A stretch of 64,000 nt of DNA, taken from Podarcis erhardii (taxonomy: Eukaryota). The notes beneath the pieces are model-generated. The model was not told where the DNA came from, did no database searches, and saw only the letters and a program-made list of their open reading frames with translations. How positions within the stretch are numbered: the first letter of the stretch is position 1; every line of letters begins with the position of its first letter. Positions 11,095 through 58,086 of this stretch are shown here, piece after piece. Made by a program: the position numbers and the translations under genes. The stretch lies in assembly GCA_964252035.1 (NCBI GenBank), contig OZ176209.1; one strand, given 5' to 3'.

Positions 11095-11710
11095 CCGTAT
11101 TTTTCACCCCATAGGACGCACCGGCCCATAGGACGCACCGGCCCATAGGATGCACCAAGTTTTTTGGGGGGGAAATAAAGAAAAAAAATTATTTTCCCCC
11201 CAGGCGCTTGTGGGGCCGGCAGCGGGGAGAAGCGCTCTTCTCCCCGCCGCCTGCTTGCAGACCAGGTCTGGGGACAGCGGGAAGACGCGCTGCGCCTCCC
11301 AGCTGTCCCCGGAGCTTGCGGGGCAGGCAGGGGGGAGAAGCGCTCTTCTCCCCGCCACCCGCCTGCAGACCAGGTCTGCGGACAGCGGGAAGACGCACTG
11401 CGCCTCCCCGCTGTCCCCGGAGCTTGCGGGGCTGGCTGCGGGGAGAAGAGCGCTTCTCCCCGCCGTCAGCCTCCAAACCACATCGGGAGACAGCGGGATG
11501 GCGGCGTTCTGCCTCCCTGCTGTCCCCCGACCTTGTGGGGCTGGCGCTGCGGCTCTCCTGAAGCCTGGAGAGCAAGAGGGGTCGGTGCACACTGACCCCT
11601 CTCGCTCTCCAGGCTTCAGCGAAAGCCTGCATTCGCCCCATAGGACGCACACACATTTCCCCTTCATTTTTGGAGGGGGGAAAGTGCGTCCTATAGGGCG
11701 AAAAATACAG
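11095..11710. mobile_element. Tc1/pogo(Tigger)-type non-autonomous DNA transposon with ~3 internal 108-bp GC-rich repeats
   Basis: 27-bp TIRs (CCGTATTTTTCACCCCATAGGACGCAC vs revcomp CTGTATTTTTCGCCCTATAGGACGCAC) with TA on both sides. Confidence 0.85.
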
Positions 11711-44733: not shown

Positions 44734-45195
44734 GTATGTTGAGAGAAGTTCTGTTGGCAGGCTCTTTGGATGTGGATTTGTTTGTGTGTGTGGTAGACCT
44801 GGATGAATGATAAAAAGGGAGCAAAATTATTAATTCAAGCCAGTTACTGGCACTACTGATTATCTAGTGAGGACCATCTTTCAGGCAAGCGTACTTAGTA
44901 CTTATCCTTAAGTTCTCTGTGCACTGCCTTCCATTTTACTCACATTCTCATTGGTTGGCAAGTAGTTCTACAGGAGTGCCACTGAGTGGGAGGAGGAGGA
45001 GGATGGGCCAAAGCTCCATCCATTCTCCGATGTGAACTGCCTGCAAGTCACACCACTCCCTCCACATCCTTTTCTCCTTTGTGTTCCAAACTGAGGGAGC
45101 AGGAGCTGATGGAGACTAGATCTGCCCCTGGGACTTTCAATTGTTGATACCAAACATAGTTTATTCAGATACTGACAATTCTTTTTTATCAACAG

Positions 45196-45368
45196 GCACA
45201 AATGACCAGCTCTTCCTGTCCTGTGACTTCTCCAGTAGTGGCGCCAGGTTCTCAAGGGAGTCATATTCATTGCCCTCCTATTCCACAGTCTACTTTACAT
45301 CGAAACTCTCCTTCTCCAGTACCAAGTCGTACTCCCACACCTCACCATACACCCCCAGGACTGGTATC

Positions 45369-45412
<44 letters not shown>

Positions 45413-45681
45413 CAGCACCACCACAGGCAACAATTGCGTCTGCTCCTGCCACTGTTCCTCAAGCGATGCCACCCGGACCACCGTCACAAACTATGCACCC
45501 CCCACAGAGGCAGACCCCAACACCTCCCCAGGCTCAGCTGACTCCGCAAGTGCAGCCTCCAGTTTCTGTTACCCCTTCTGCAGAGCAGCAGCTGCCACAG
45601 CAACCTCTTTCGCAACAGAGCACGACTGCATCTGTGCCCACCCCTACAGCAGCACTGCAGCCTCAGCATCCTACAACACCC
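45196..45681 (+). CDS. EP300: EP300 exon 14 (486 nt; P/Q-rich, contains Q14)
   Basis: atcaacag|GCACAAATG ... ACACCC|gtaagg; encodes AQMTSSSCPV...SPSPVPSRTPTPHHTPP. Confidence 0.94.
45370..45411 (+). repeat. Coding (CAG)13CAA repeat (Q14)
   Basis: In frame within exon 14. Confidence 0.95.
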
Positions 45682-46159
45682 GTAAGGAAGTTTAAGTTTT
45701 CTAGGGCTATTAAGAGTGAAAGTCCAACCTTGGGCAAAATCTTTTTAGGTTGTTATTTACAGTATCAAAGGCTAAATGGTTTCTGCTGTCTCAATAACGT
45801 GCATTGCATGAAGGTATAGAACAGTATTCTGGACTTTGGAATGCATGCTGTCTTTTGTATAGCAGAGTTTCAAAGAATTAATTCAGCTACAGATGTCTGA
45901 TAAAAATATGTGTGTGTGATTTCTGGGGAGGAAGGTGCAGAAAGTGGTATAGCTAGACATAATTTCGTGGTAGGCTAGTATTAAGATATTGGGGTTTTTT
46001 TGTGTAGCGCCTCTTCTTATTGAGATGCACGTGGCATAAGTTGCTTGAGATACCATCTAGCTTAGAAGCACAAAATAAAGCAAAGAGTACAATTGCTGCA
46101 AAACTGTGTAGCACTACTTGACATGTAGCTTTACTAGTTTTGTTGCTTTCATTCTGTAG

Positions 46160-47319: not shown

Positions 47320-47372
<53 letters not shown>
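47085..47372 (+). mobile_element. L2-like LINE 3' end with an (ATT)17 tail
   Basis: TTGTTAGC-like 'GTTAGCCGCCCTGA...GGGCGGGGTATAAA' terminus followed by (ATT)n at 47320-47370; 5' boundary approximate. Confidence 0.65.
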
Positions 47373-47374
<2 letters not shown>

Positions 47375-48218
47375 GTGGGGAAGTGTGTGTGTCTGTCTGT
47401 TTCTCTCTCTCTGCGGCCCCTTCGGCGCTTCTCTCCCGGGCATCGGAGAACAAGAGAAAAGCAGAGAGGAGACAGACAGACAGACAGACAGACAGACACA
47501 GACAGAGGACTCAGCATGGGACTCGGGAAAACCAGGAGCTGGCTGACCGACCCATTCACCAGGGAAGCTGGAGTCGCTCTGTTGGGTTGGGCTTTGGGTG
47601 GGCAGGAAGGAGAACTGAGGCTCATTGGCTTCGCAGTGTGCAGGCAGCAAGGTCTCCTGTTGTGAGGTGTCTTCAAGGAGCAGCTTGCCTCCACCCCTTC
47701 ACTTCTTCCAGCCCCGCTTCATGACATTCACTCCTTCTGCGCCTCGCCTGCCTTCTCACTGGCTCTCCCTCTTCCCCACCCGGTCCGCGCTCTCCAGCAC
47801 AGGCGAAAGAGCAACCTCCTTCTGAGTTCAAAAAAAGGAGGGAAAGGCAACGAAATCAGGCTTATGCAAAAGCCAGGCAGAAGCATCCCGATGTGGCACA
47901 TTGCAAAGCTGCCCCCTCTCCCGTGTGTGTGTTTTGCTTCGCGCAAGCGTGGCCCAGCGTAGCTCTCCTCTCCCTGGTGTCGGAGGGCAGGCTCGTCCAC
48001 CCCCACCCTGCTCTGCATCATGGATCTTGAAAACAGCAGCACAGCCCGAGCCAGCTGTTTGTCCTCAAGGGTAAGAGACAGACCCTTCTGTTTATCGATG
48101 GCTAGCTGATCTGTTGCTCTCCGCCAAAATAAAAAATAAAAATCCAAACCTGCTTTGGATCCAAACCCACACCATCACAACCCACTCTGGTACACGTGTC
48201 ATAGGTTCACCACCACTG
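47373..48218. mobile_element. GC-rich unclassified repeat ending in a hAT/Charlie-like terminus
   Basis: Abrupt GC/CpG rise, (GACA)n near 47480-47506, right end ...CATAGGTTCACCACCACTG; no matching left TIR or TSD found. Confidence 0.4.
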
Positions 48219-50335: not shown

Positions 50336-50424
50336 TTGGAGTTTTCACCACAGACTTTATGTTGCTATGGCAAACAGTTATGCACAATCCCACGAGATGC
50401 TACATATTACAGTTACCAAAACAG
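50336..50424 (+). CDS. EP300: EP300 exon 19 (89 nt; RING start)
   Basis: cttttcag|TTGGAG ... AAACAG|gtaaga; encodes LEFSPQTLCCYGKQLCTIPRDATYYSYQN. Confidence 0.96.
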
Positions 50425-50865
50425 GTAAGAAAATGCTTGGGTACAGCATTGCACCTGCTGTGAAAAATTATATTAGATATAGGCAGGCATGCACTTACAT
50501 TTGTAGCATTCTCAGCAGATTACTTCCCATGCAAGCCTTGTTGCATCAATTGACTTTTACTTCCTGTTTCAGAAATTAGGATGTTAATATAAACTCTCCA
50601 TATGCTTTAGATTAGTTCAAAGCTTTTGCAGTAAAACCATCATTTTTTCCTCTGTATGAAACAGTGCACAGAAAAGCATGCATGTTTGCATCTTGAGTTC
50701 ACTGCATTTAACATTCAGTCTTGTCCTAAGGGAGACATATTTCCTGTTTTAGATCAGTTATTTCAACCAAAGCTGTAGTTGTAAAGCTGTGTTTTGTTTG
50801 AGCCGCGTGAAAAGCAGGGTGCCTGCAAGGTCAGAGAGGGGCTGACTTCACTCTGCCTCTTACAG

Positions 50866-50962
50866 TCTCTCACGCTCAGCTAGAATTTCTATGGTAGTAG
50901 CACTCCTGTGTGTGTGCTTGGGATCTCTTAACTATTGAGGCATAACTGTCAAGTGTTCCTGA
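50866..50962 (+). other. Candidate cassette poison exon in intron 19
   Basis: Branch motif CTGAC (50842-46), pyrimidine tract and CAG (50863-65); donor GA|GTATGT (50963); 97 nt with an in-frame TGA at 50936-38. Confidence 0.35.
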
Positions 50963-51192
50963 GTATGTACTCTTGTTTAAGAAGCTAAATCTTGCACTGC
51001 ATCAGACCAAGATCTACCTGGTCCAGCATCTTTTATGGGAATTTCAGTAAACCAGCAACTTCTCTGTACTCCATTGGATCTGCAGCCTTCAGTTTCTTCT
51101 CGATAGCTCTTTTCTGAAGTGGAAATTAACTGAGGAGTGAACTCTGGAGTTGTTTCATTAAATAAGCATCACCGTGCATCTTAACTTTACCA

Positions 51193-51283
51193 CCTGCATG
51201 ATGATGGCAATCTTTCTGAAGACTTGCTTTCTGTGATAGCACGGTTCTATGTTCTGCTTTGGGTTCGGAAAACATCTGATAGG
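51193..51283 (+). ncRNA. Box C/D snoRNA-like element (candidate)
   Basis: Box C ATGATGA 51198-204, D' CTGA 51216-19, degenerate C' GTGATAG 51233-39, D CTGA 51276-79, and a 4-bp terminal stem CCUG/UAGG in K-turn register. Confidence 0.35.
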
Positions 51284-52530
51284 AAAAACTGTGTTTGGAG
51301 CTCTTTTAAGGGAGGAAGCAAAACTGAGAACACAACTTTTTCACGTTTTTTGTCAGGAGTATTGCTGCAAATCATGCTTTGGGTGGGTTGCTGAAGTAGA
51401 TAACTAGTTCTTTAACAAATCTAAAGCTAAGCTTTCATTTATTTCTATAACTTTACAGCTTCATGCCATAAGTCATTTTTATCACAAATGCCCACTTGAG
51501 TAAAGAAATCATCATATGTATACATATGAGCTGGGATCCAAAGAACTGCTGTAGGTGTGTACATGGGCTAGGGCATTGCTACTGGATTTTTTTTACCTTT
51601 AATCAGCAGACTGTCATGCCATATCACAGCTTTTGAAATTAAGAGGAGTTTCAAAATCAATGTGGAATGGAAGGTTGCTGTCCAAAACATGCAAGGCAAA
51701 GCCCCCCCCCCCAGCAGATAACACTAAGTGGTTCTTTGGACACTGGTCTTTTGAATGTCCAAAATCAATGTTTGTCATTGTATCAGTGTAATAAATAAAC
51801 TAACCTGTTATAGATAGGAAACATAGGTGGTGAAGAAGTGATCCGTTCCTTAGCAATTACATTTCCTCTAGTGTTGGTTTTGCTTTGCTTTATAATACTG
51901 TCACAGTTTTGTTTTTTTGTTTTTGTTTCTTTTTGTTGTATGTTTGCACTCAAATTAACTTGCTTAGCAATGGAAAGGCTGCAGTTTCTGTGCACTCTTG
52001 AGGGTAAAAAAACATCTTGAGTAAAGCATTCAACATTAATTTAGATGAAGATGGAATCCTTTTAATATGTCAATTATACATCAATTTGGAGGCATGGAAC
52101 ATCAGTACGTCACATATTAAGAACATACATATGCATATCTCATTGTCAGATGCCTTAAAGCACCTGTCATTTTGGCAGATCATGAACAATTACATAGAAA
52201 TTGTTTTGGGGATGGTTACTGCTGCTTTAAACAGATGTTGCAAACAAAAAATGCTTTGAGGGGAAGGACTGGCCTGTCAACATTTGAGCATTCTCAAGAT
52301 GGATTGTTTTCACCCCTTTCCAGCCCTCTCCTGGCAGATGTTCTTGTGAAAAGAGTTGCTACCCTGATGCAGATGTCAGAGCAGCAATTGCTCTTACCCT
52401 TTCTTCATTTTGATTCTCTGCTTTATTGTAGCATTGATTATTGAAATGAGGAGGGCATGGGCATACTAAAATGGAATACTCTTTTTATTTGCTATAATTT
52501 GCTGCTTGTGATCCCATTTGAGAGATTTAA

Positions 52531-52873
52531 TGCTAATCTGTGCTTTGCCTTGGCTTTCTGCTTTGTGTTGTCCTGTCTTGCTTCTGTGTTTTTGTTTTTC
52601 GTCCTGCAAATCCCTATTTCTTTGTTCGTGTGTGTGTGTTGTTTTTTTATTTCTCCTTCATGCTTGTCGTTGTCTGCACTTGGCTTTGATTGCAAAAAAA
52701 CCAACCCAAACAAAAAAACAAAACCAAACACAAACTCTGGGTCCCATAAATCTTCATCATTGAATGTCCCTGTCGCCGTTGATGACCTGCTCTCTGCTCC
52801 CGCCCCCCTCCTTGGCCTGCTGTGATTGGTGGCTCCGTTGCTTGGCTTGGGCTGTGTTGTGTGGACGGAACAG
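52531..52873 (+). promoter_or_regulatory. Candidate distant branch point (tgctaAtc, A at 52536), long U/UG-rich tract and AG-exclusion zone before exon 20
   Basis: Read base by base, there is no AG from 52525 to 52871. The YUNAY motif CTAAT at 52533-52537 sits at the 5' edge and is followed by a pyrimidine/UG tract. Confidence 0.65.
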
Positions 52874-52903
52874 TTCACCCAAATATGGCCTTCTTGCCGA
52901 CAG
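52874..52903 (+). CDS. EP300: Candidate 30-nt 5' extension of exon 20 from an upstream alternative acceptor (adds SSPKYGLLAD)
   Basis: CAG at 52871-52873 is the first AG after a 347-nt AG-free stretch and is in frame with the CAG at 52901-52903; no stop codon between them. Confidence 0.7.
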
Positions 52904-52984
52904 GTATCATTTCTGTGAGAAGTGCTTCAATGAAATCCAAGGAGAGAGCGTTTCTTTGGGGGACGACCCATCACAGCCTCAAAC
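52904..52984 (+). CDS. EP300: EP300 exon 20 (81 nt; RING)
   Basis: gccgacag|GTATCAT ... CAAAC|gtgagt; encodes (R)YHFCEKCFNEIQGESVSLGDDPSQPQ(T). Confidence 0.95.
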
Positions 52985-55014
52985 GTGAGTAGCTATCTCC
53001 TTTCTAATTATTTTTAAATTTCTTAACAACATTTATCATAGCATTAGTCAATCTCATACTGTAAATACTATTAAACAATTTACATCAAATTTATGGTAAA
53101 ATTCCTTATTTAATGCTGAGGCCTTGTGCAATTATGGGAGGAACAGAGGACAGGAATATTATTTGAAAACTAGACAAACCTTATGTTTCAGAATAAGCTT
53201 TAGCTTTTAAAACACATATTTTGGTGAGAATATGAAAAACCACTTTTGAAAAGTAGAAGCATTCTTCCAGTTTATATGCTAGATTTAATAACGACCTAAT
53301 GTTTAAGAATTCCAATCCCACCTGAGCCTGCAAAATTTTTTGTTGCTTCTGCTTGTAGAAAAGAGACTTCACAGCTTGCTTTAACTTTTAACTATTTTGT
53401 GCATGTGCATGCACACACATACACACAATGACTACCTTTAATCTGTTGAGCAGGAGATCCAGTAAGGAATTGTTCAGGCAGGTACCTAACTGAAAGCAGG
53501 CCTAAATTTGAAAACACGGGTGACAGATTTTCCTGCTCAAAATAGGGTTATGTTGGAGCAGAGTGTTCATAGGAATTGTTTGCTGGAGGTTGCAACCATG
53601 TTCTGACACTTAGAATATTTATGTGCCTTTACATATTGGCCATATTTGAACGCCACATCCTCTTCTCCTTAGGCACAGCTACAAGGATGAGATGAGAACT
53701 GCATGTTGTCCAAACCCTAAACTGTGACTAACCTTAACTATGGCTTGCAACAACTCAACTTCAAACCATGTGTTATGAAGCATGCTTGTTTCAAACAACC
53801 CATAGTTAATGCTAGCCACAGTTTAAGTTAAGTTCAGATGACACGATGTTGCGGTTAATCTAACCCAGAAGAGGAACCATTGGAACTCTCAGGAGGGGAG
53901 TGCACAAGCTCAAGGCTTGTGGCTCACTCTTGTCATGCTGATGTGTGACTTGTCGTGAAATCTGGACTGGGTCAATGTGTAAGGCTCCCTTGCTTCAACT
54001 TCAATATTTGTAATGTTGTTCTGATAGTTCCATAATATGTGAAATAGATTACTTAATTGCAGTAAGTGGGGGTCCTTTGCCTGATGGATTCTGGTTATAT
54101 GTGAAAATATATAAACAGGGAAGGTTTTAGAAGCAGGAAAGAGCCTAATGCCGAGGATTAAACAAGAAGCGCTTGGAAGGAGACTTAGCTAAAAACTTAG
54201 TCTTCAGTCTTGTCCACCACTAATTTAACCTATAGGAGAAAATATGTAGTAGATTTTTGGAGAAGAAGTGCCTAAAATGCTTTTAAATACATTTTTAATG
54301 CTAAAATACACTGGATCTCAAGAGACATAATTTTTAGTCTGGTTGGATTCTGAGGCAGCAAATGTCTTCCAGAAAAGGAAAGTTTCCTACCCTTCAAAAG
54401 GTGAAAGGGAGCTAGCCAGGAAAAGCTTCTCTAGGCAACAATTTCATAACTGGAACATCACCACCAAGAACATCCTAGATGTCCAGATTTTTCCTCTAGT
54501 CCAAGAACACTCTTTGAAATCTGAGAAACAGTTGTAGGCACTACAAAATATCCTTTCATATCCAGGCCAAGTTCAAGGTGTTACTATTGATATACTAATA
54601 CAAAACCCTCAACAACTTGGGATCCATTTACTTGTGAGATCACCTTACCTCATTATATGCACATTTGATCTTTGAACATTTTAAAATACCTATTTTAACT
54701 TTTTTTTGTTGACATTACATTAACTTATGTCTTGTAAACCACTTAGAGGTTTATTACAATTAAGCAGTACGGTATATAAACTTCGTTAAATACTAGATAC
54801 ACACACACCAAAGCAGGCAGAATACCTCTCCCCCACAAAAAAATTAATACAAACAATTACCACTCCCCTGTCCTTCCCCAAACTTGACATTTATTCATTT
54901 TGTATACTGCCCTTCACCCACAGATCTCAGGACAGTTAGTTCACAACATTAAATTACAATATAAAAACCACAAAATACATAGTAAAAAAGAACAACATCA
55001 ACAACTTATAATGA

Positions 55015-56780: not shown

Positions 56781-57341
56781 ATAAGTTGTATATTAATAAA
56801 TTTCAGTCTTTAAAGATGATGTGTTTTATAAAATGGGGTTTCATGATACGTCAAACTGTAGAATGTGTTTAAATAGTACGTTCTGTACTTCCTAGTAGCC
56901 TCTTTATGCTTGTCTGCTCCCCAGTCTGTGATGAGTGTTGAATTTGGATGGTTAGAAGCTGCATGGTGACTGCATGGTTCCTGTACCTAGTGAGGAAGAA
57001 ATTATCTGTAGTTTCTGATGACACTGCTAAGCCCTAAGACTTTCTGGATTTTTAAGCATTTGCAGAGGGGGAGGAGTGCTTAAGTGTGTGGTCACAGGTT
57101 ATGAATGGCAACTCCGGTGTCTTAAAAGCTTTTAAGTAGCCACTACATTGCCCTAGATATTTGAATTCACCTGTAGTTTTCCTTCCTCTCAAAAGTTTTA
57201 ATTCTTAAGAAGCAGAATGCATATGGAGTCCTATTGGGCTATGTAGCAGGGTTTCCTGTAGGTGCTAGGAAGATTTATTATTATTATTATGAGCAGCTAC
57301 TTATTTTTGTTACAACTGTGATTATCAATTTTTCTCCTCAG

Positions 57342-57398
57342 CACAATAAATAAAGACCAGTTTTCTAAAAGGAAAAATGATACACTGGACCCTGAACA
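57342..57398 (+). CDS. EP300: EP300 exon 21 (57 nt)
   Basis: tctcctcag|CACAATA ... GAACA|gtaagt; encodes TINKDQFSKRKNDTLDPE(Q). Confidence 0.94.
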
Positions 57399-58086
57399 GT
57401 AAGTCATGCTTGAGCAGCTCAAATCACTTGTCATTTTAAAAATGAAATAAAGTTTTTTTCACCGTTTATTCATTTATTTATTTTTGCAGAGTGTGGGAGG
57501 GGTGAGTGGAAGGCTTTAGCATTATTCTCTTAGTTTATCACCTGCAATATTGATGATGTGTTGTACCTTAAGAAAGCAAATATTTGCCTGCCTAAGTATG
57601 GCCACATAATCTGAGTTTGGGGTAGAAAAGCCTTTGATTACTTTAGTCAATATTACAAATTTATATTGAATATATTTGTTTTGAAGTATAAAAAATTGAC
57701 TTCACTTTTTCAAAAGCCTCCCAATCCTCTTTGTAAACATTTAACTGTGCTTTGTCATGTACCTAGTTCTGCTTTCAGACTTAGATGTACAGGAATCTTA
57801 GTTGCTGTGAATTCTTTTAGTAGTGGAATGTAAGAAATGAGAAGCTATATAATGCATAACTAAAATCAATGTAGACCATATGGGGAGTAGTGGTTTGCAT
57901 TTGGGCATAGTACACTAGACTGTTGCTGAGAAAAGATACATGTACAGCAGATCAACAGGTTTGAAATTGTACAGTTCTGAATATTTTGTACTTGGGCTAC
58001 ATAATCTTCAGTTCCAACACATTTTTTCTAAATCAGTTATCTTCAACAACTTCCTGTGTTGCTTATACTTTGATTCTCTCTTCCAG

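What the first reader, a model, noticed from the sequence alone, without database searches (positions are those of the whole stretch)
52525..52873. 347-nt AG-exclusion zone with a candidate distant branch point before RING exon 20
Seen: no AG dinucleotide occurs from 52525 to 52871. The zone opens with tgCTAAT (52533-37, candidate branch A 52536, 337 nt from the first AG), followed by ~140 nt of U/UG-rich tract. Known: long AG-free zones mark distant branch points, as in the regulated exons of TPM1, TPM2 and ACTN1, where the spliceosome scans to the first AG. Inference: at a rough 6-7% background AG frequency (estimated by eye) such a gap is vanishingly unlikely, although the U-rich composition inflates it. 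This implies selection and a regulated or slow splicing step at the auto-inhibitory RING of p300. Caveat: weaker proximal YUNAY-like motifs exist (ATGAC ~52782, GTGAT ~52822, TTCAC 52874).
Basis: partly seen in the sequence, partly recalled or inferred. Interest (0 to 1): 0.8.

Follow-up and report, generated by a model that had tools for sequence, protein, structure and literature searches.

The report
Conserved AG-free zone before p300 exon
A 347-base stretch with no AG, just upstream of an EP300 (p300) exon, is real and is kept in fish, birds, mammals and the sister gene CREBBP; it ends at an ancient alternative splice acceptor that adds ten amino acids to the RING region, and it most likely marks a distant branch point.

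Summary
No AG occurs at 52525-52871. This AG-to-AG gap (349 nt) is the longest in the window, against 5-9 AG expected from local shuffles.

The gene is EP300 on the + strand, probably from a squamate. The reference-frame acceptor is the AG at 52902-3. The AG that ends the zone (52872-3) lies 30 nt upstream and in frame, and would add SSPKYGLLAD.

Isoforms with that insertion are annotated in p300 and CBP from sharks to mammals. Tunicate and beetle proteins carry the segment too, so the long form is ancestral.

The AG-free zone (253-379 nt) holds in turkey, kiwi, narwhal and trout p300 and in a bird CREBBP, even where the sequence between has turned over. It opens at a UGCUAAU block identical in all six.

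Only two branch-point candidates are conserved in all six: A52536 (distal) and A52877 (27 nt before the downstream acceptor).

Best reading: this is the AG exclusion zone of a distant branch point serving the upstream acceptor, one half of a dual branch-point, dual-acceptor switch.

The parts
50336..50424 (+). EP300 exon 19 (..FSPQTLCCYGKQLCTIPRDATYYSYQN, ends with AG of a split Arg/Ser codon); the 5' splice site GTAAG starts at 50425
   Evidence: Sequence reading; tblastn of p300 proteins
50425..52903 (+). Intron 19, 2479 nt to the downstream acceptor (2449 nt to the upstream acceptor)
52400..52524 (+). Amniote-conserved intron block upstream of the zone, with normal AG density (6 AG)
   Evidence: Four-species alignment; AG list
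52525..52871 (+). AG-free zone (347 nt): the AG exclusion zone of the upstream acceptor
   Evidence: Conserved as 326-379 nt in p300 of turkey, kiwi, narwhal and trout, and as 253 nt in Tauraco CREBBP
52531..52537 (+). Candidate distal branch-point sequence UGCUAAU (branch A 52536; 368 nt before exon 20, 336 nt before the first AG)
   Evidence: 5 of 6 possible U2 pairs, the best in the zone; TNA kept in 6 of 6 sequences; 13 nt after the last upstream AG in five of the six sequences (15 in narwhal, 56 in trout)
52538..52585 (+). Most conserved block: U/G/C pyrimidine-rich tract after the branch candidate (about 73% pyrimidine, 5 YGCY motifs counted from the branch motif); a variable U/UG-rich continuation runs to about 52680
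   Evidence: Near-identical in all six sequences including trout p300 and bird CBP
52693..52738 (+). G-free A/C-rich tract. Its length and sequence vary among species but it has no G in any amniote p300 copy
52786..52822 (+). C/U-rich tract following the intermediate branch candidates UUGAU/AUGAC (A 52782, A 52785); GUGAU (A 52825) follows it
   Evidence: candidates kept in amniotes, not clearly in trout or CBP
52872..52873 (+). Upstream (ancestral, long-form) acceptor AG: the first AG after the zone. Its proximal 21 nt are only about 38% pyrimidine
   Evidence: Conserved in all six vertebrate sequences and the tunicate. Isoforms using it are annotated in many vertebrates. The snake long isoform P0395 aligns across it at 97.5%
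52874..52903 (+). 30-nt alternative segment coding (S)SPKYGLLAD. It also carries the proximal branch candidate GUUCAC (A 52877) and the short pyrimidine tract 52889-52898 of the downstream acceptor
   Evidence: Identity 26-30 of 30 across species and paralogues, higher than the adjoining exon
52902..52903 (+). Downstream acceptor AG, used by the reference (short) p300 and CBP
   Evidence: Frame continuity YQN-R-YHFCEKCF
52904..52984 (+). EP300 exon 20, short form (81 nt; YHFCEKCFNEIQGESVSLGDDPSQPQ-T). The 5' splice site GTGAGT starts at 52985, and conservation stops there
   Evidence: 100% identity to human p300 chains in the PDB; alignment

Best explanation
The AG-free stretch is the AG exclusion zone of a distant branch point in EP300 intron 19.

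Inferred mechanism: U2 snRNP pairs with UGCUAAU (branch A 52536), which is followed by a conserved pyrimidine/UG-rich tract. After step 1 the spliceosome takes the first downstream AG, at 52872-3. That yields the long, ancestral exon form, which adds SSPKYGLLAD next to the RING.

Any AG arising in the 336 nt between would be used as a false acceptor, so AG is purged. That purging is what keeps the zone.

The reference short form uses the second AG (52902-3), most likely through its own proximal branch point (A 52877 in GUUCAC) and the weak tract inside the 30-nt segment. The choice of isoform would then be a choice between two branch points. Proteins binding the UGU/YGCY-rich zone may tune that choice.

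Shown: the zone, its selection, both acceptors' conservation, and annotated long isoforms in relatives.

Inferred: which branch points are used, and any regulation.
For: - AG count: 0 AG against 5-9 expected in each of five p300 zones; P(0) no more than 0.002.
- Position and length: the zone is kept from -381/-363/-395/-362/-413 to -32/-35 in p300, and from -285 to -32 in a bird CREBBP.
- Distal part: from branch A to -131, which lies upstream of every nearer candidate, there is 0 AG against 3.3-4.8 expected in amniotes (P0 0.001-0.02) and 4.1 in trout (P0 0.006). The equal length just upstream holds 6-15 AG.
- Branch candidates: only A52536 and A52877 keep TNA in all six sequences, and UGCUAAU has the best U2 complementarity.
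- Conservation: the block from UGCUAAU onward is the most conserved part between trout, amniotes and CBP.
- Upstream acceptor: it lacks a nearby pyrimidine tract yet is a real acceptor. Long isoforms are annotated in p300 of teleosts, frogs, a snake, bear and anteater, and in CBP of skates, a shark, a turtle, a bat and teleosts. The tunicate uses it, and beetles have the segment without an intron.
- Strand: the depletion is strand-specific, with CT 34-54 against AG 0.
- Published precedent: in long exclusion zones that were mapped, all but one exon used distant branch points near the 5' end, and MBNL1 exon 9 used both -229 and -31/-41 (PMC2991248). Definition and first-AG rule: PMC1431707.
Against: - No lariat, junction or expression data exist for this species.
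- Much of the amniote zone is ultraconserved, so part of the AG-free state there could be carried along by constraint on something else.
- Composition explains a good part of the depletion: A-poor and G-free blocks give 3-9 AG expected, not 24.
- In CBP the distal-part test is not significant on its own (expected 1.0).
- Intermediate branch candidates with a C/U tract (A 52782/52785) and GUGAU (A 52825) exist and are conserved in amniotes.
- Which isoform dominates, and whether the long one is made in squamates beyond one Ensembl snake model, is unknown.
Confidence: 0.65

Rival explanations
1. The branch points are proximal or intermediate (A 52877, A 52825, A 52782/52785). On this reading the long AG-free stretch is a by-product. 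The block would be a dense, ultraconserved platform for RNA-binding regulators with UGU/YGCY/CA-rich motifs (for example the CELF, MBNL or hnRNP L type) that sets the ratio of the two acceptors, and its composition and constraint leave no room for AG.
For: - UGU is enriched about 2-fold (z 4-5) and YGCY about 1.8-fold in all six zones.
- The amniote sequences are 82-90% identical over about 430 columns.
- Composition lowers the expected AG count to 3-9.
- Intermediate TNA candidates followed by a C/U tract are conserved in amniotes.
Against: - AG is absent also where the sequence has turned over (the trout middle part, the CBP middle part, and the indel-rich A/C tract).
- Local shuffles that keep composition still reject 0 AG.
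- AG density switches from normal to zero within 13-15 nt of the UGCUAAU in five of six sequences.
- The intermediate candidates are not kept in trout or CBP.
- The upstream acceptor has no usable pyrimidine tract near it.
Confidence: 0.22
2. One distal branch point serves both acceptors. The choice between the two CAGs, 30 nt apart, would be made at step 2, for example by masking the first AG with a protein or a local hairpin.
For: - The MFE fold of the window pairs the G of the first AG and A52877 in a 6-bp stem.
- The downstream acceptor's own tract is weak (57% pyrimidine, among the lowest of 23 acceptors).
Against: - The consensus fold of six sequences gives no covariation support: the covariation term is +2.11, and only 1 of 22 pairs shows a double change.
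- GUUCAC at -27 is conserved in all six sequences, as expected of a used proximal branch point, although the coding constraint of the segment could also explain this.
- From memory of the scanning literature, an AG 30 nt further on rarely beats the first AG.
Confidence: 0.08
3. The block is a DNA-level conserved non-coding element (an enhancer or similar), or a chance low-complexity stretch, and the lack of AG has no splicing meaning.
For: - Deeply conserved intronic blocks are often enhancers (general knowledge).
- Long single-dinucleotide gaps occur elsewhere in the window at repeats.
Against: - The depletion is strand-specific, with CT abundant.
- Conservation is flush with the acceptors and stops at the exon's 5' splice site.
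- The same architecture is kept in both paralogues and in a 556-nt trout intron.
- Shuffles reject chance.
Confidence: 0.04

Closest known systems
PTBP1 exon 11 and GABBR1 exon 23 (distant branch points found through AG exclusion zones; Gooding et al. 2006, PMC1431707)
   Same: AG exclusion zones of 380 and 287 nt with verified branch points at -351 and -275. The branch sequence and pyrimidine tract lie at the 5' end of the zone, AG density is normal upstream, and the first AG is used. Both are associated with alternative splicing.
   Different: Here the first AG is one of two in-frame acceptors 30 nt apart, and the reference isoform uses the second. The branch point is not mapped. The module is shared by two paralogues and by all jawed vertebrates sampled.
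MBNL1 exon 9, CLK1/CLK3 exon 4 and HTR4 exons (mapped branch points in long exclusion zones; Corvelo et al. 2010, PMC2991248)
   Same: Zones are 101-291 nt with branch points towards their 5' end, and the pyrimidine tracts are interrupted by purines. MBNL1 exon 9 uses a distal (-229) and proximal (-31/-41) branch points on one acceptor region.
   Different: In EP300 the two candidate branch points would feed two different acceptors and so two protein isoforms. The zone is longer (349 nt).
TPM1 exon 3, TPM2 and ACTN1 regulated exons
   Same: Distant branch point, long pyrimidine tract, and regulatory elements between the branch point and the exon.
   Different: Those are mutually exclusive or cassette exons repressed by PTB. 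Here UCUU and CUCUCU motifs are not enriched, and the event is an alternative acceptor that changes 10 residues in frame.
Tandem alternative acceptors (in-frame alternative 3' splice sites)
   Same: Two AGs in frame produce isoforms that differ by a short peptide.
   Different: The spacing of 30 nt is too far for NAGNAG-type competition. The segment is an ancestral part of the protein (tunicate, beetles), and the upstream site has a 349-nt exclusion zone.

Membership tests
Distant-branch-point 3' splice sites with a long AG exclusion zone | At least 100 nt without AG directly upstream of a used acceptor (AGs within 12 nt ignored) | tested here: met
   349 nt for acceptor 52872-3. For the reference acceptor 52902-3 the zone is only 30 nt by the published definition.
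Distant-branch-point 3' splice sites with a long AG exclusion zone | A consensus branch sequence followed by a pyrimidine tract at the 5' end of the zone | tested here: met
   UGCUAAU at 52531-52537 with 5 of 6 U2 pairs. The 60 nt from the motif onward are 73% pyrimidine. The motif is identical in six sequences.
Distant-branch-point 3' splice sites with a long AG exclusion zone | Normal AG density upstream of the zone | tested here: met
   14 AG in the 237 nt upstream in the window; 6-15 in the other five sequences.
Distant-branch-point 3' splice sites with a long AG exclusion zone | The first AG after the branch point is used as the acceptor | tested here: inconclusive
   Isoforms starting at this AG are annotated in many vertebrates, including a snake, and in both paralogues. 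No transcript evidence was obtained for the window's own species.
Distant-branch-point 3' splice sites with a long AG exclusion zone | A lariat mapped to the distal adenosine, or loss of splicing on its mutation | not testable with these tools
Distant-branch-point 3' splice sites with a long AG exclusion zone | Evolutionary maintenance of the AG-free state beyond plain sequence conservation | tested here: met
   Trout p300 (379 nt) and bird CBP (253 nt) keep it although only short blocks align. The distal-part test in trout gives P0 = 0.006.
In-frame tandem alternative acceptors | Two AGs in the same frame with no stop between, both supported by gene models | tested here: met
   30 nt apart, coding SSPKYGLLAD. 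Short and long forms both occur among annotated p300 and CBP proteins.
Deeply conserved non-coding element | High identity over hundreds of bases between distant vertebrates, bounded by unconserved sequence | tested here: met
   Window against narwhal 89%, kiwi 90% and turkey 85% over about 430 columns. The downstream intron is not alignable.

The most novel reading that the evidence does not exclude
CBP and p300 share a splicing switch older than their duplication. A distal and a proximal branch point select between the ancestral acceptor and an internal one. The textbook 'canonical' vertebrate p300/CBP would then be the derived short form, lacking a ten-residue segment (SSPKYGLLAD) that invertebrate CBPs carry next to the autoinhibitory RING. 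The ultraconserved UGU/YGCY-rich exclusion zone would let tissue-specific RNA-binding proteins set the ratio, and so tune acetyltransferase autoinhibition.
Probability: 0.3. Interest if true: 0.8.

Novelty: new member of a known kind. Interest (0 to 1): 0.66.

Why it matters
p300 and CBP are central acetyltransferases, and the RING region restrains their catalytic domain.

If the reading is right, it would show three things:
- Both genes have kept, for over 400 million years, an unusual 3' splice-site architecture that decides whether ten ancestral residues are present beside the RING.
- The reference proteins used in structural and biochemical work are the derived short form.
- A clean, testable example exists of selection acting on the absence of a dinucleotide.

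I found no paper in the searchable library that describes this event.

It also gives concrete experiments: lariat mapping, branch-point and AG-insertion minigenes, and isoform-specific HAT assays.

Tried and rejected
There are therefore no junction or lariat data. They were only read, aligned and counted locally. One local script used a 13-letter motif from that place to anchor the already-fetched loci.
- Folding: UG-rich and AC-rich arms pair in the MFE, but the zone is not more stable than shuffles (z +0.5 to +1.6). A 6-bp hairpin over the first AG has no covariation support.
- PTB-type motifs: UCUU and CUCUCU are not enriched.
- Gooding 2006: EP300 and CREBBP are not named in the text or in the held supplements. 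Papers that mention both EP300 and exclusion zones or ultraconserved elements were irrelevant.
- AlphaFold2 of the long RING-PHD region: mean pLDDT 51.9, so no conclusion on the insertion's structure.
- Locus look-ups: four proteins were not on record (P0261, P0258, P0154, P0035) and one gene was too long (P0205).
- My first reading (a low-complexity stretch and no distant branch point, 65%) was abandoned after the orthologue comparison.

Full report
**Observation.** The window has no AG from 52525 to 52871. The flanking AGs are at 52523-4 and 52872-3. This 349-nt AG-to-AG gap is the longest in the 64-kb window; the next is 159, and the window-wide AG frequency is 6.9%.

The zone is compositionally layered. 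It has an A-poor U/UG part, a 46-nt G-free A/C tract (52693-52738), then C/U-rich and G/U-rich parts. Gaps of 250-490 nt occur for other dinucleotides at repeats in this window, so I tested against local composition. Shuffling within 10-, 20- and 50-nt blocks gives 4.8, 6.1 and 8.7 expected AG, with P(0) of 0.0016, 0.0002 and below 0.0002. GA occurs 7 times and CT 37 times against AG 0, so the depletion is specific to order and strand.

**Gene context.** The window carries EP300 on the + strand, exons 2 to about 24. The exon after the zone encodes YHFCEKCFNEIQGESVSLGDDPSQPQ(T), 100% identical to human p300 chains in the PDB. Exon 19 ends at 50424 and the intron starts with GTAAG at 50425.

The frame of the reference protein (YQN-R-YHF) requires the acceptor AG at 52902-3, so exon 20 is 52904-52984. 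The AG that closes the zone lies 30 nt upstream and in frame, and using it would add SSPKYGLLAD.

By the published definition (from the acceptor back to the first AG beyond -12; PMC1431707), the reference acceptor has an ordinary 30-nt exclusion zone. The 349-nt zone belongs to the upstream AG. Approximate zones for 23 acceptors of this gene are 17-70 nt.

The closest protein is a snake p300 at about 89% identity; turtles score 85% and birds 83%. The window is therefore probably squamate.

**The upstream AG is a real, ancient acceptor.** Protein searches returned many annotated isoforms with YQN-SSP[KQ][YF]GL[LIV]A[DN]-RYHF:
- p300 of many teleosts, two frogs, the snake Pseudonaja textilis, polar bear and tamandua. 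The mammals have SSPQYGLLAD, which matches the narwhal DNA.
- CBP of two skates, a shark, a turtle, a bat and teleost crebbp-b.

The snake long isoform aligns across 52866-52985 at 97.5%.

Invertebrate CBPs carry the segment too: beetles have YQNSSLKAYGL[AT]SDRY, Bombyx has a similar form, and the tunicate Clavelina has YENSTPKYGLLSDRY. A mealybug isoform lacks exactly these residues.

In the tunicate gene the intron sits at the same place and the annotated acceptor is the upstream one, with the second AG also present 30 nt later. In the beetle Phyllotreta there is no intron there. The long form is therefore ancestral, and the vertebrate reference form uses an internal acceptor in the Arg codon.

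The 30-nt segment is more conserved than the adjoining coding exon:

| Comparison | 30-nt segment | 83 nt from the exon start |
|---|---|---|
| Turkey p300 vs Tauraco CBP | 30/30 | 70/83 |
| Window vs trout p300 | 26/30 | 67/83 |

The trout differences are three third-codon-position changes plus Y to F. That pattern fits a double load of coding and splice signals.

**The zone is conserved.** I fetched orthologous loci through exact-protein look-ups: turkey L001, kiwi L002, narwhal L003, trout L004 and Tauraco CREBBP L005. Counted from the exon start, the last AGs upstream are as follows:

| Sequence | AG-free from | to |
|---|---|---|
| Window p300 | -381 | -32 |
| Turkey p300 | -363 | -35/-32 |
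| Kiwi p300 | -395 | -35/-32 |
| Narwhal p300 | -362 | -32 (plus an AG at -22) |
| Trout p300 | -413 | -32 |
| Tauraco CBP | -285 | -32 |

In amniotes about 500 nt upstream of the exon are 82-90% identical, and conservation stops at the exon's 5' splice site. In trout the whole intron is about 556 nt and only short blocks align. In CBP likewise. Yet both remain AG-free, with 0 against about 7 expected in trout.

The best-conserved block in all six sequences starts at UGCUAAUC and runs about 50 nt through a U/G/C pyrimidine-rich tract. The last upstream AG lies 13-15 nt before the branch A in five sequences and 56 nt before it in trout. The equal length just upstream holds 6-15 AG.

I also restricted the test to the distal part, from the branch A to -131, which lies upstream of every nearer candidate. 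There the AG count is 0 against 3.3-4.8 expected in amniote p300 (P0 0.001-0.02), against 4.1 in trout (P0 0.006), and against 1.0 in CBP (not significant alone).

**Branch candidates.** Of all TNA motifs in the zone and the 30-nt segment, only two are kept in all six sequences. One is A52536 in UGCUAAU, with 5 of 6 U2 pairs, the best score. The other is A52877 in GUUCAC, 27 nt before the downstream acceptor.

Intermediate candidates (A 52782/52785 before a C/U tract, and A 52825) are kept in amniotes only.

The upstream acceptor has almost no pyrimidine tract nearby (about 38% in its last 21 nt). The downstream one has a weak tract (57%).

**Mechanism (inferred).** The architecture matches verified distant-branch-point exons: branch sequence and tract at the 5' end of the zone, normal AG density upstream, first AG used, and association with alternative splicing (PMC1431707).

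In Corvelo et al. all but one of the mapped exons with long zones used distant branch points, and MBNL1 exon 9 used both -229 and -31/-41 (PMC2991248).

I therefore read the zone as the exclusion zone of a distal branch point feeding the ancestral acceptor, with a proximal branch point feeding the internal acceptor. UGU is enriched about 2-fold and YGCY about 1.8-fold in all six zones, while PTB-type motifs are not. These are leads to regulators, not findings.

**Limits.** No read, junction or lariat evidence was obtained. Annotated isoforms are indirect evidence of use. The amniote copies are not independent of one another. Composition accounts for part of the depletion.

Several side checks gave nothing:
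- Structure around the first AG is not supported.
- Rfam gives no family match.
- An AlphaFold2 model of the long RING-PHD region was too poor to use.

Pfam places the insertion right after the RING_CBP-p300 match.

No paper in the library describes the event. This library misses most subscription journals, so the event may still be catalogued elsewhere.

**Verdict.** Selection on the AG-free state is well supported. The distant branch point is the best-supported but unproven mechanism.

Noticed in passing
This may be why a human-likeness filter tripped.
   Followed up: partly
window 52400-52524: Amniote-conserved intron block upstream of the AG-free zone. It includes a near-perfect UACUAAA (about 52466-52472) and a U-rich run ending at the GAGAG of 52520-52524. 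It is absent from narwhal in part, and its role is unknown.
   Followed up: no
window 11199-11545: GC-rich tandem repeat in EP300 intron 1: a 108-nt unit, 3.2 copies, 84% matches. It is open in all three + frames and TA-free for 451 nt.
   Followed up: no
window 47320-47863: A trinucleotide microsatellite (reads as poly-I, poly-Y or poly-L in the three frames) is followed by a 491-nt TA-free GC-rich stretch in an intron.
   Followed up: no
window 45193-45720: The large exon carries a run of 13 glutamine codons. It is the least conserved coding part of p300 against the snake protein (74%).
   Followed up: no
L006 8064-8124 (Clavelina lepadiformis): The tunicate CBP/p300 gene has its intron at the same place and the same two AGs 30 nt apart. 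Its annotated acceptor is the upstream one, and its AG-free stretch is only 86 nt.
   Followed up: partly
proteins P0327, P0439, P0443, P0444, P0445: A caecilian CBP model and several fish p300/CBP models carry other, unrelated insertions at the same YQN|RYHF junction. These are possibly intron-derived or mis-annotated, which hints that this 3' splice region is hard for gene predictors.
   Followed up: no
window 57340-57399: Small exon 21 (about 20 residues..TINK.QFSKRKND..) was missed at strict thresholds. It was found only with the snake protein and a short word size.
   Followed up: partly
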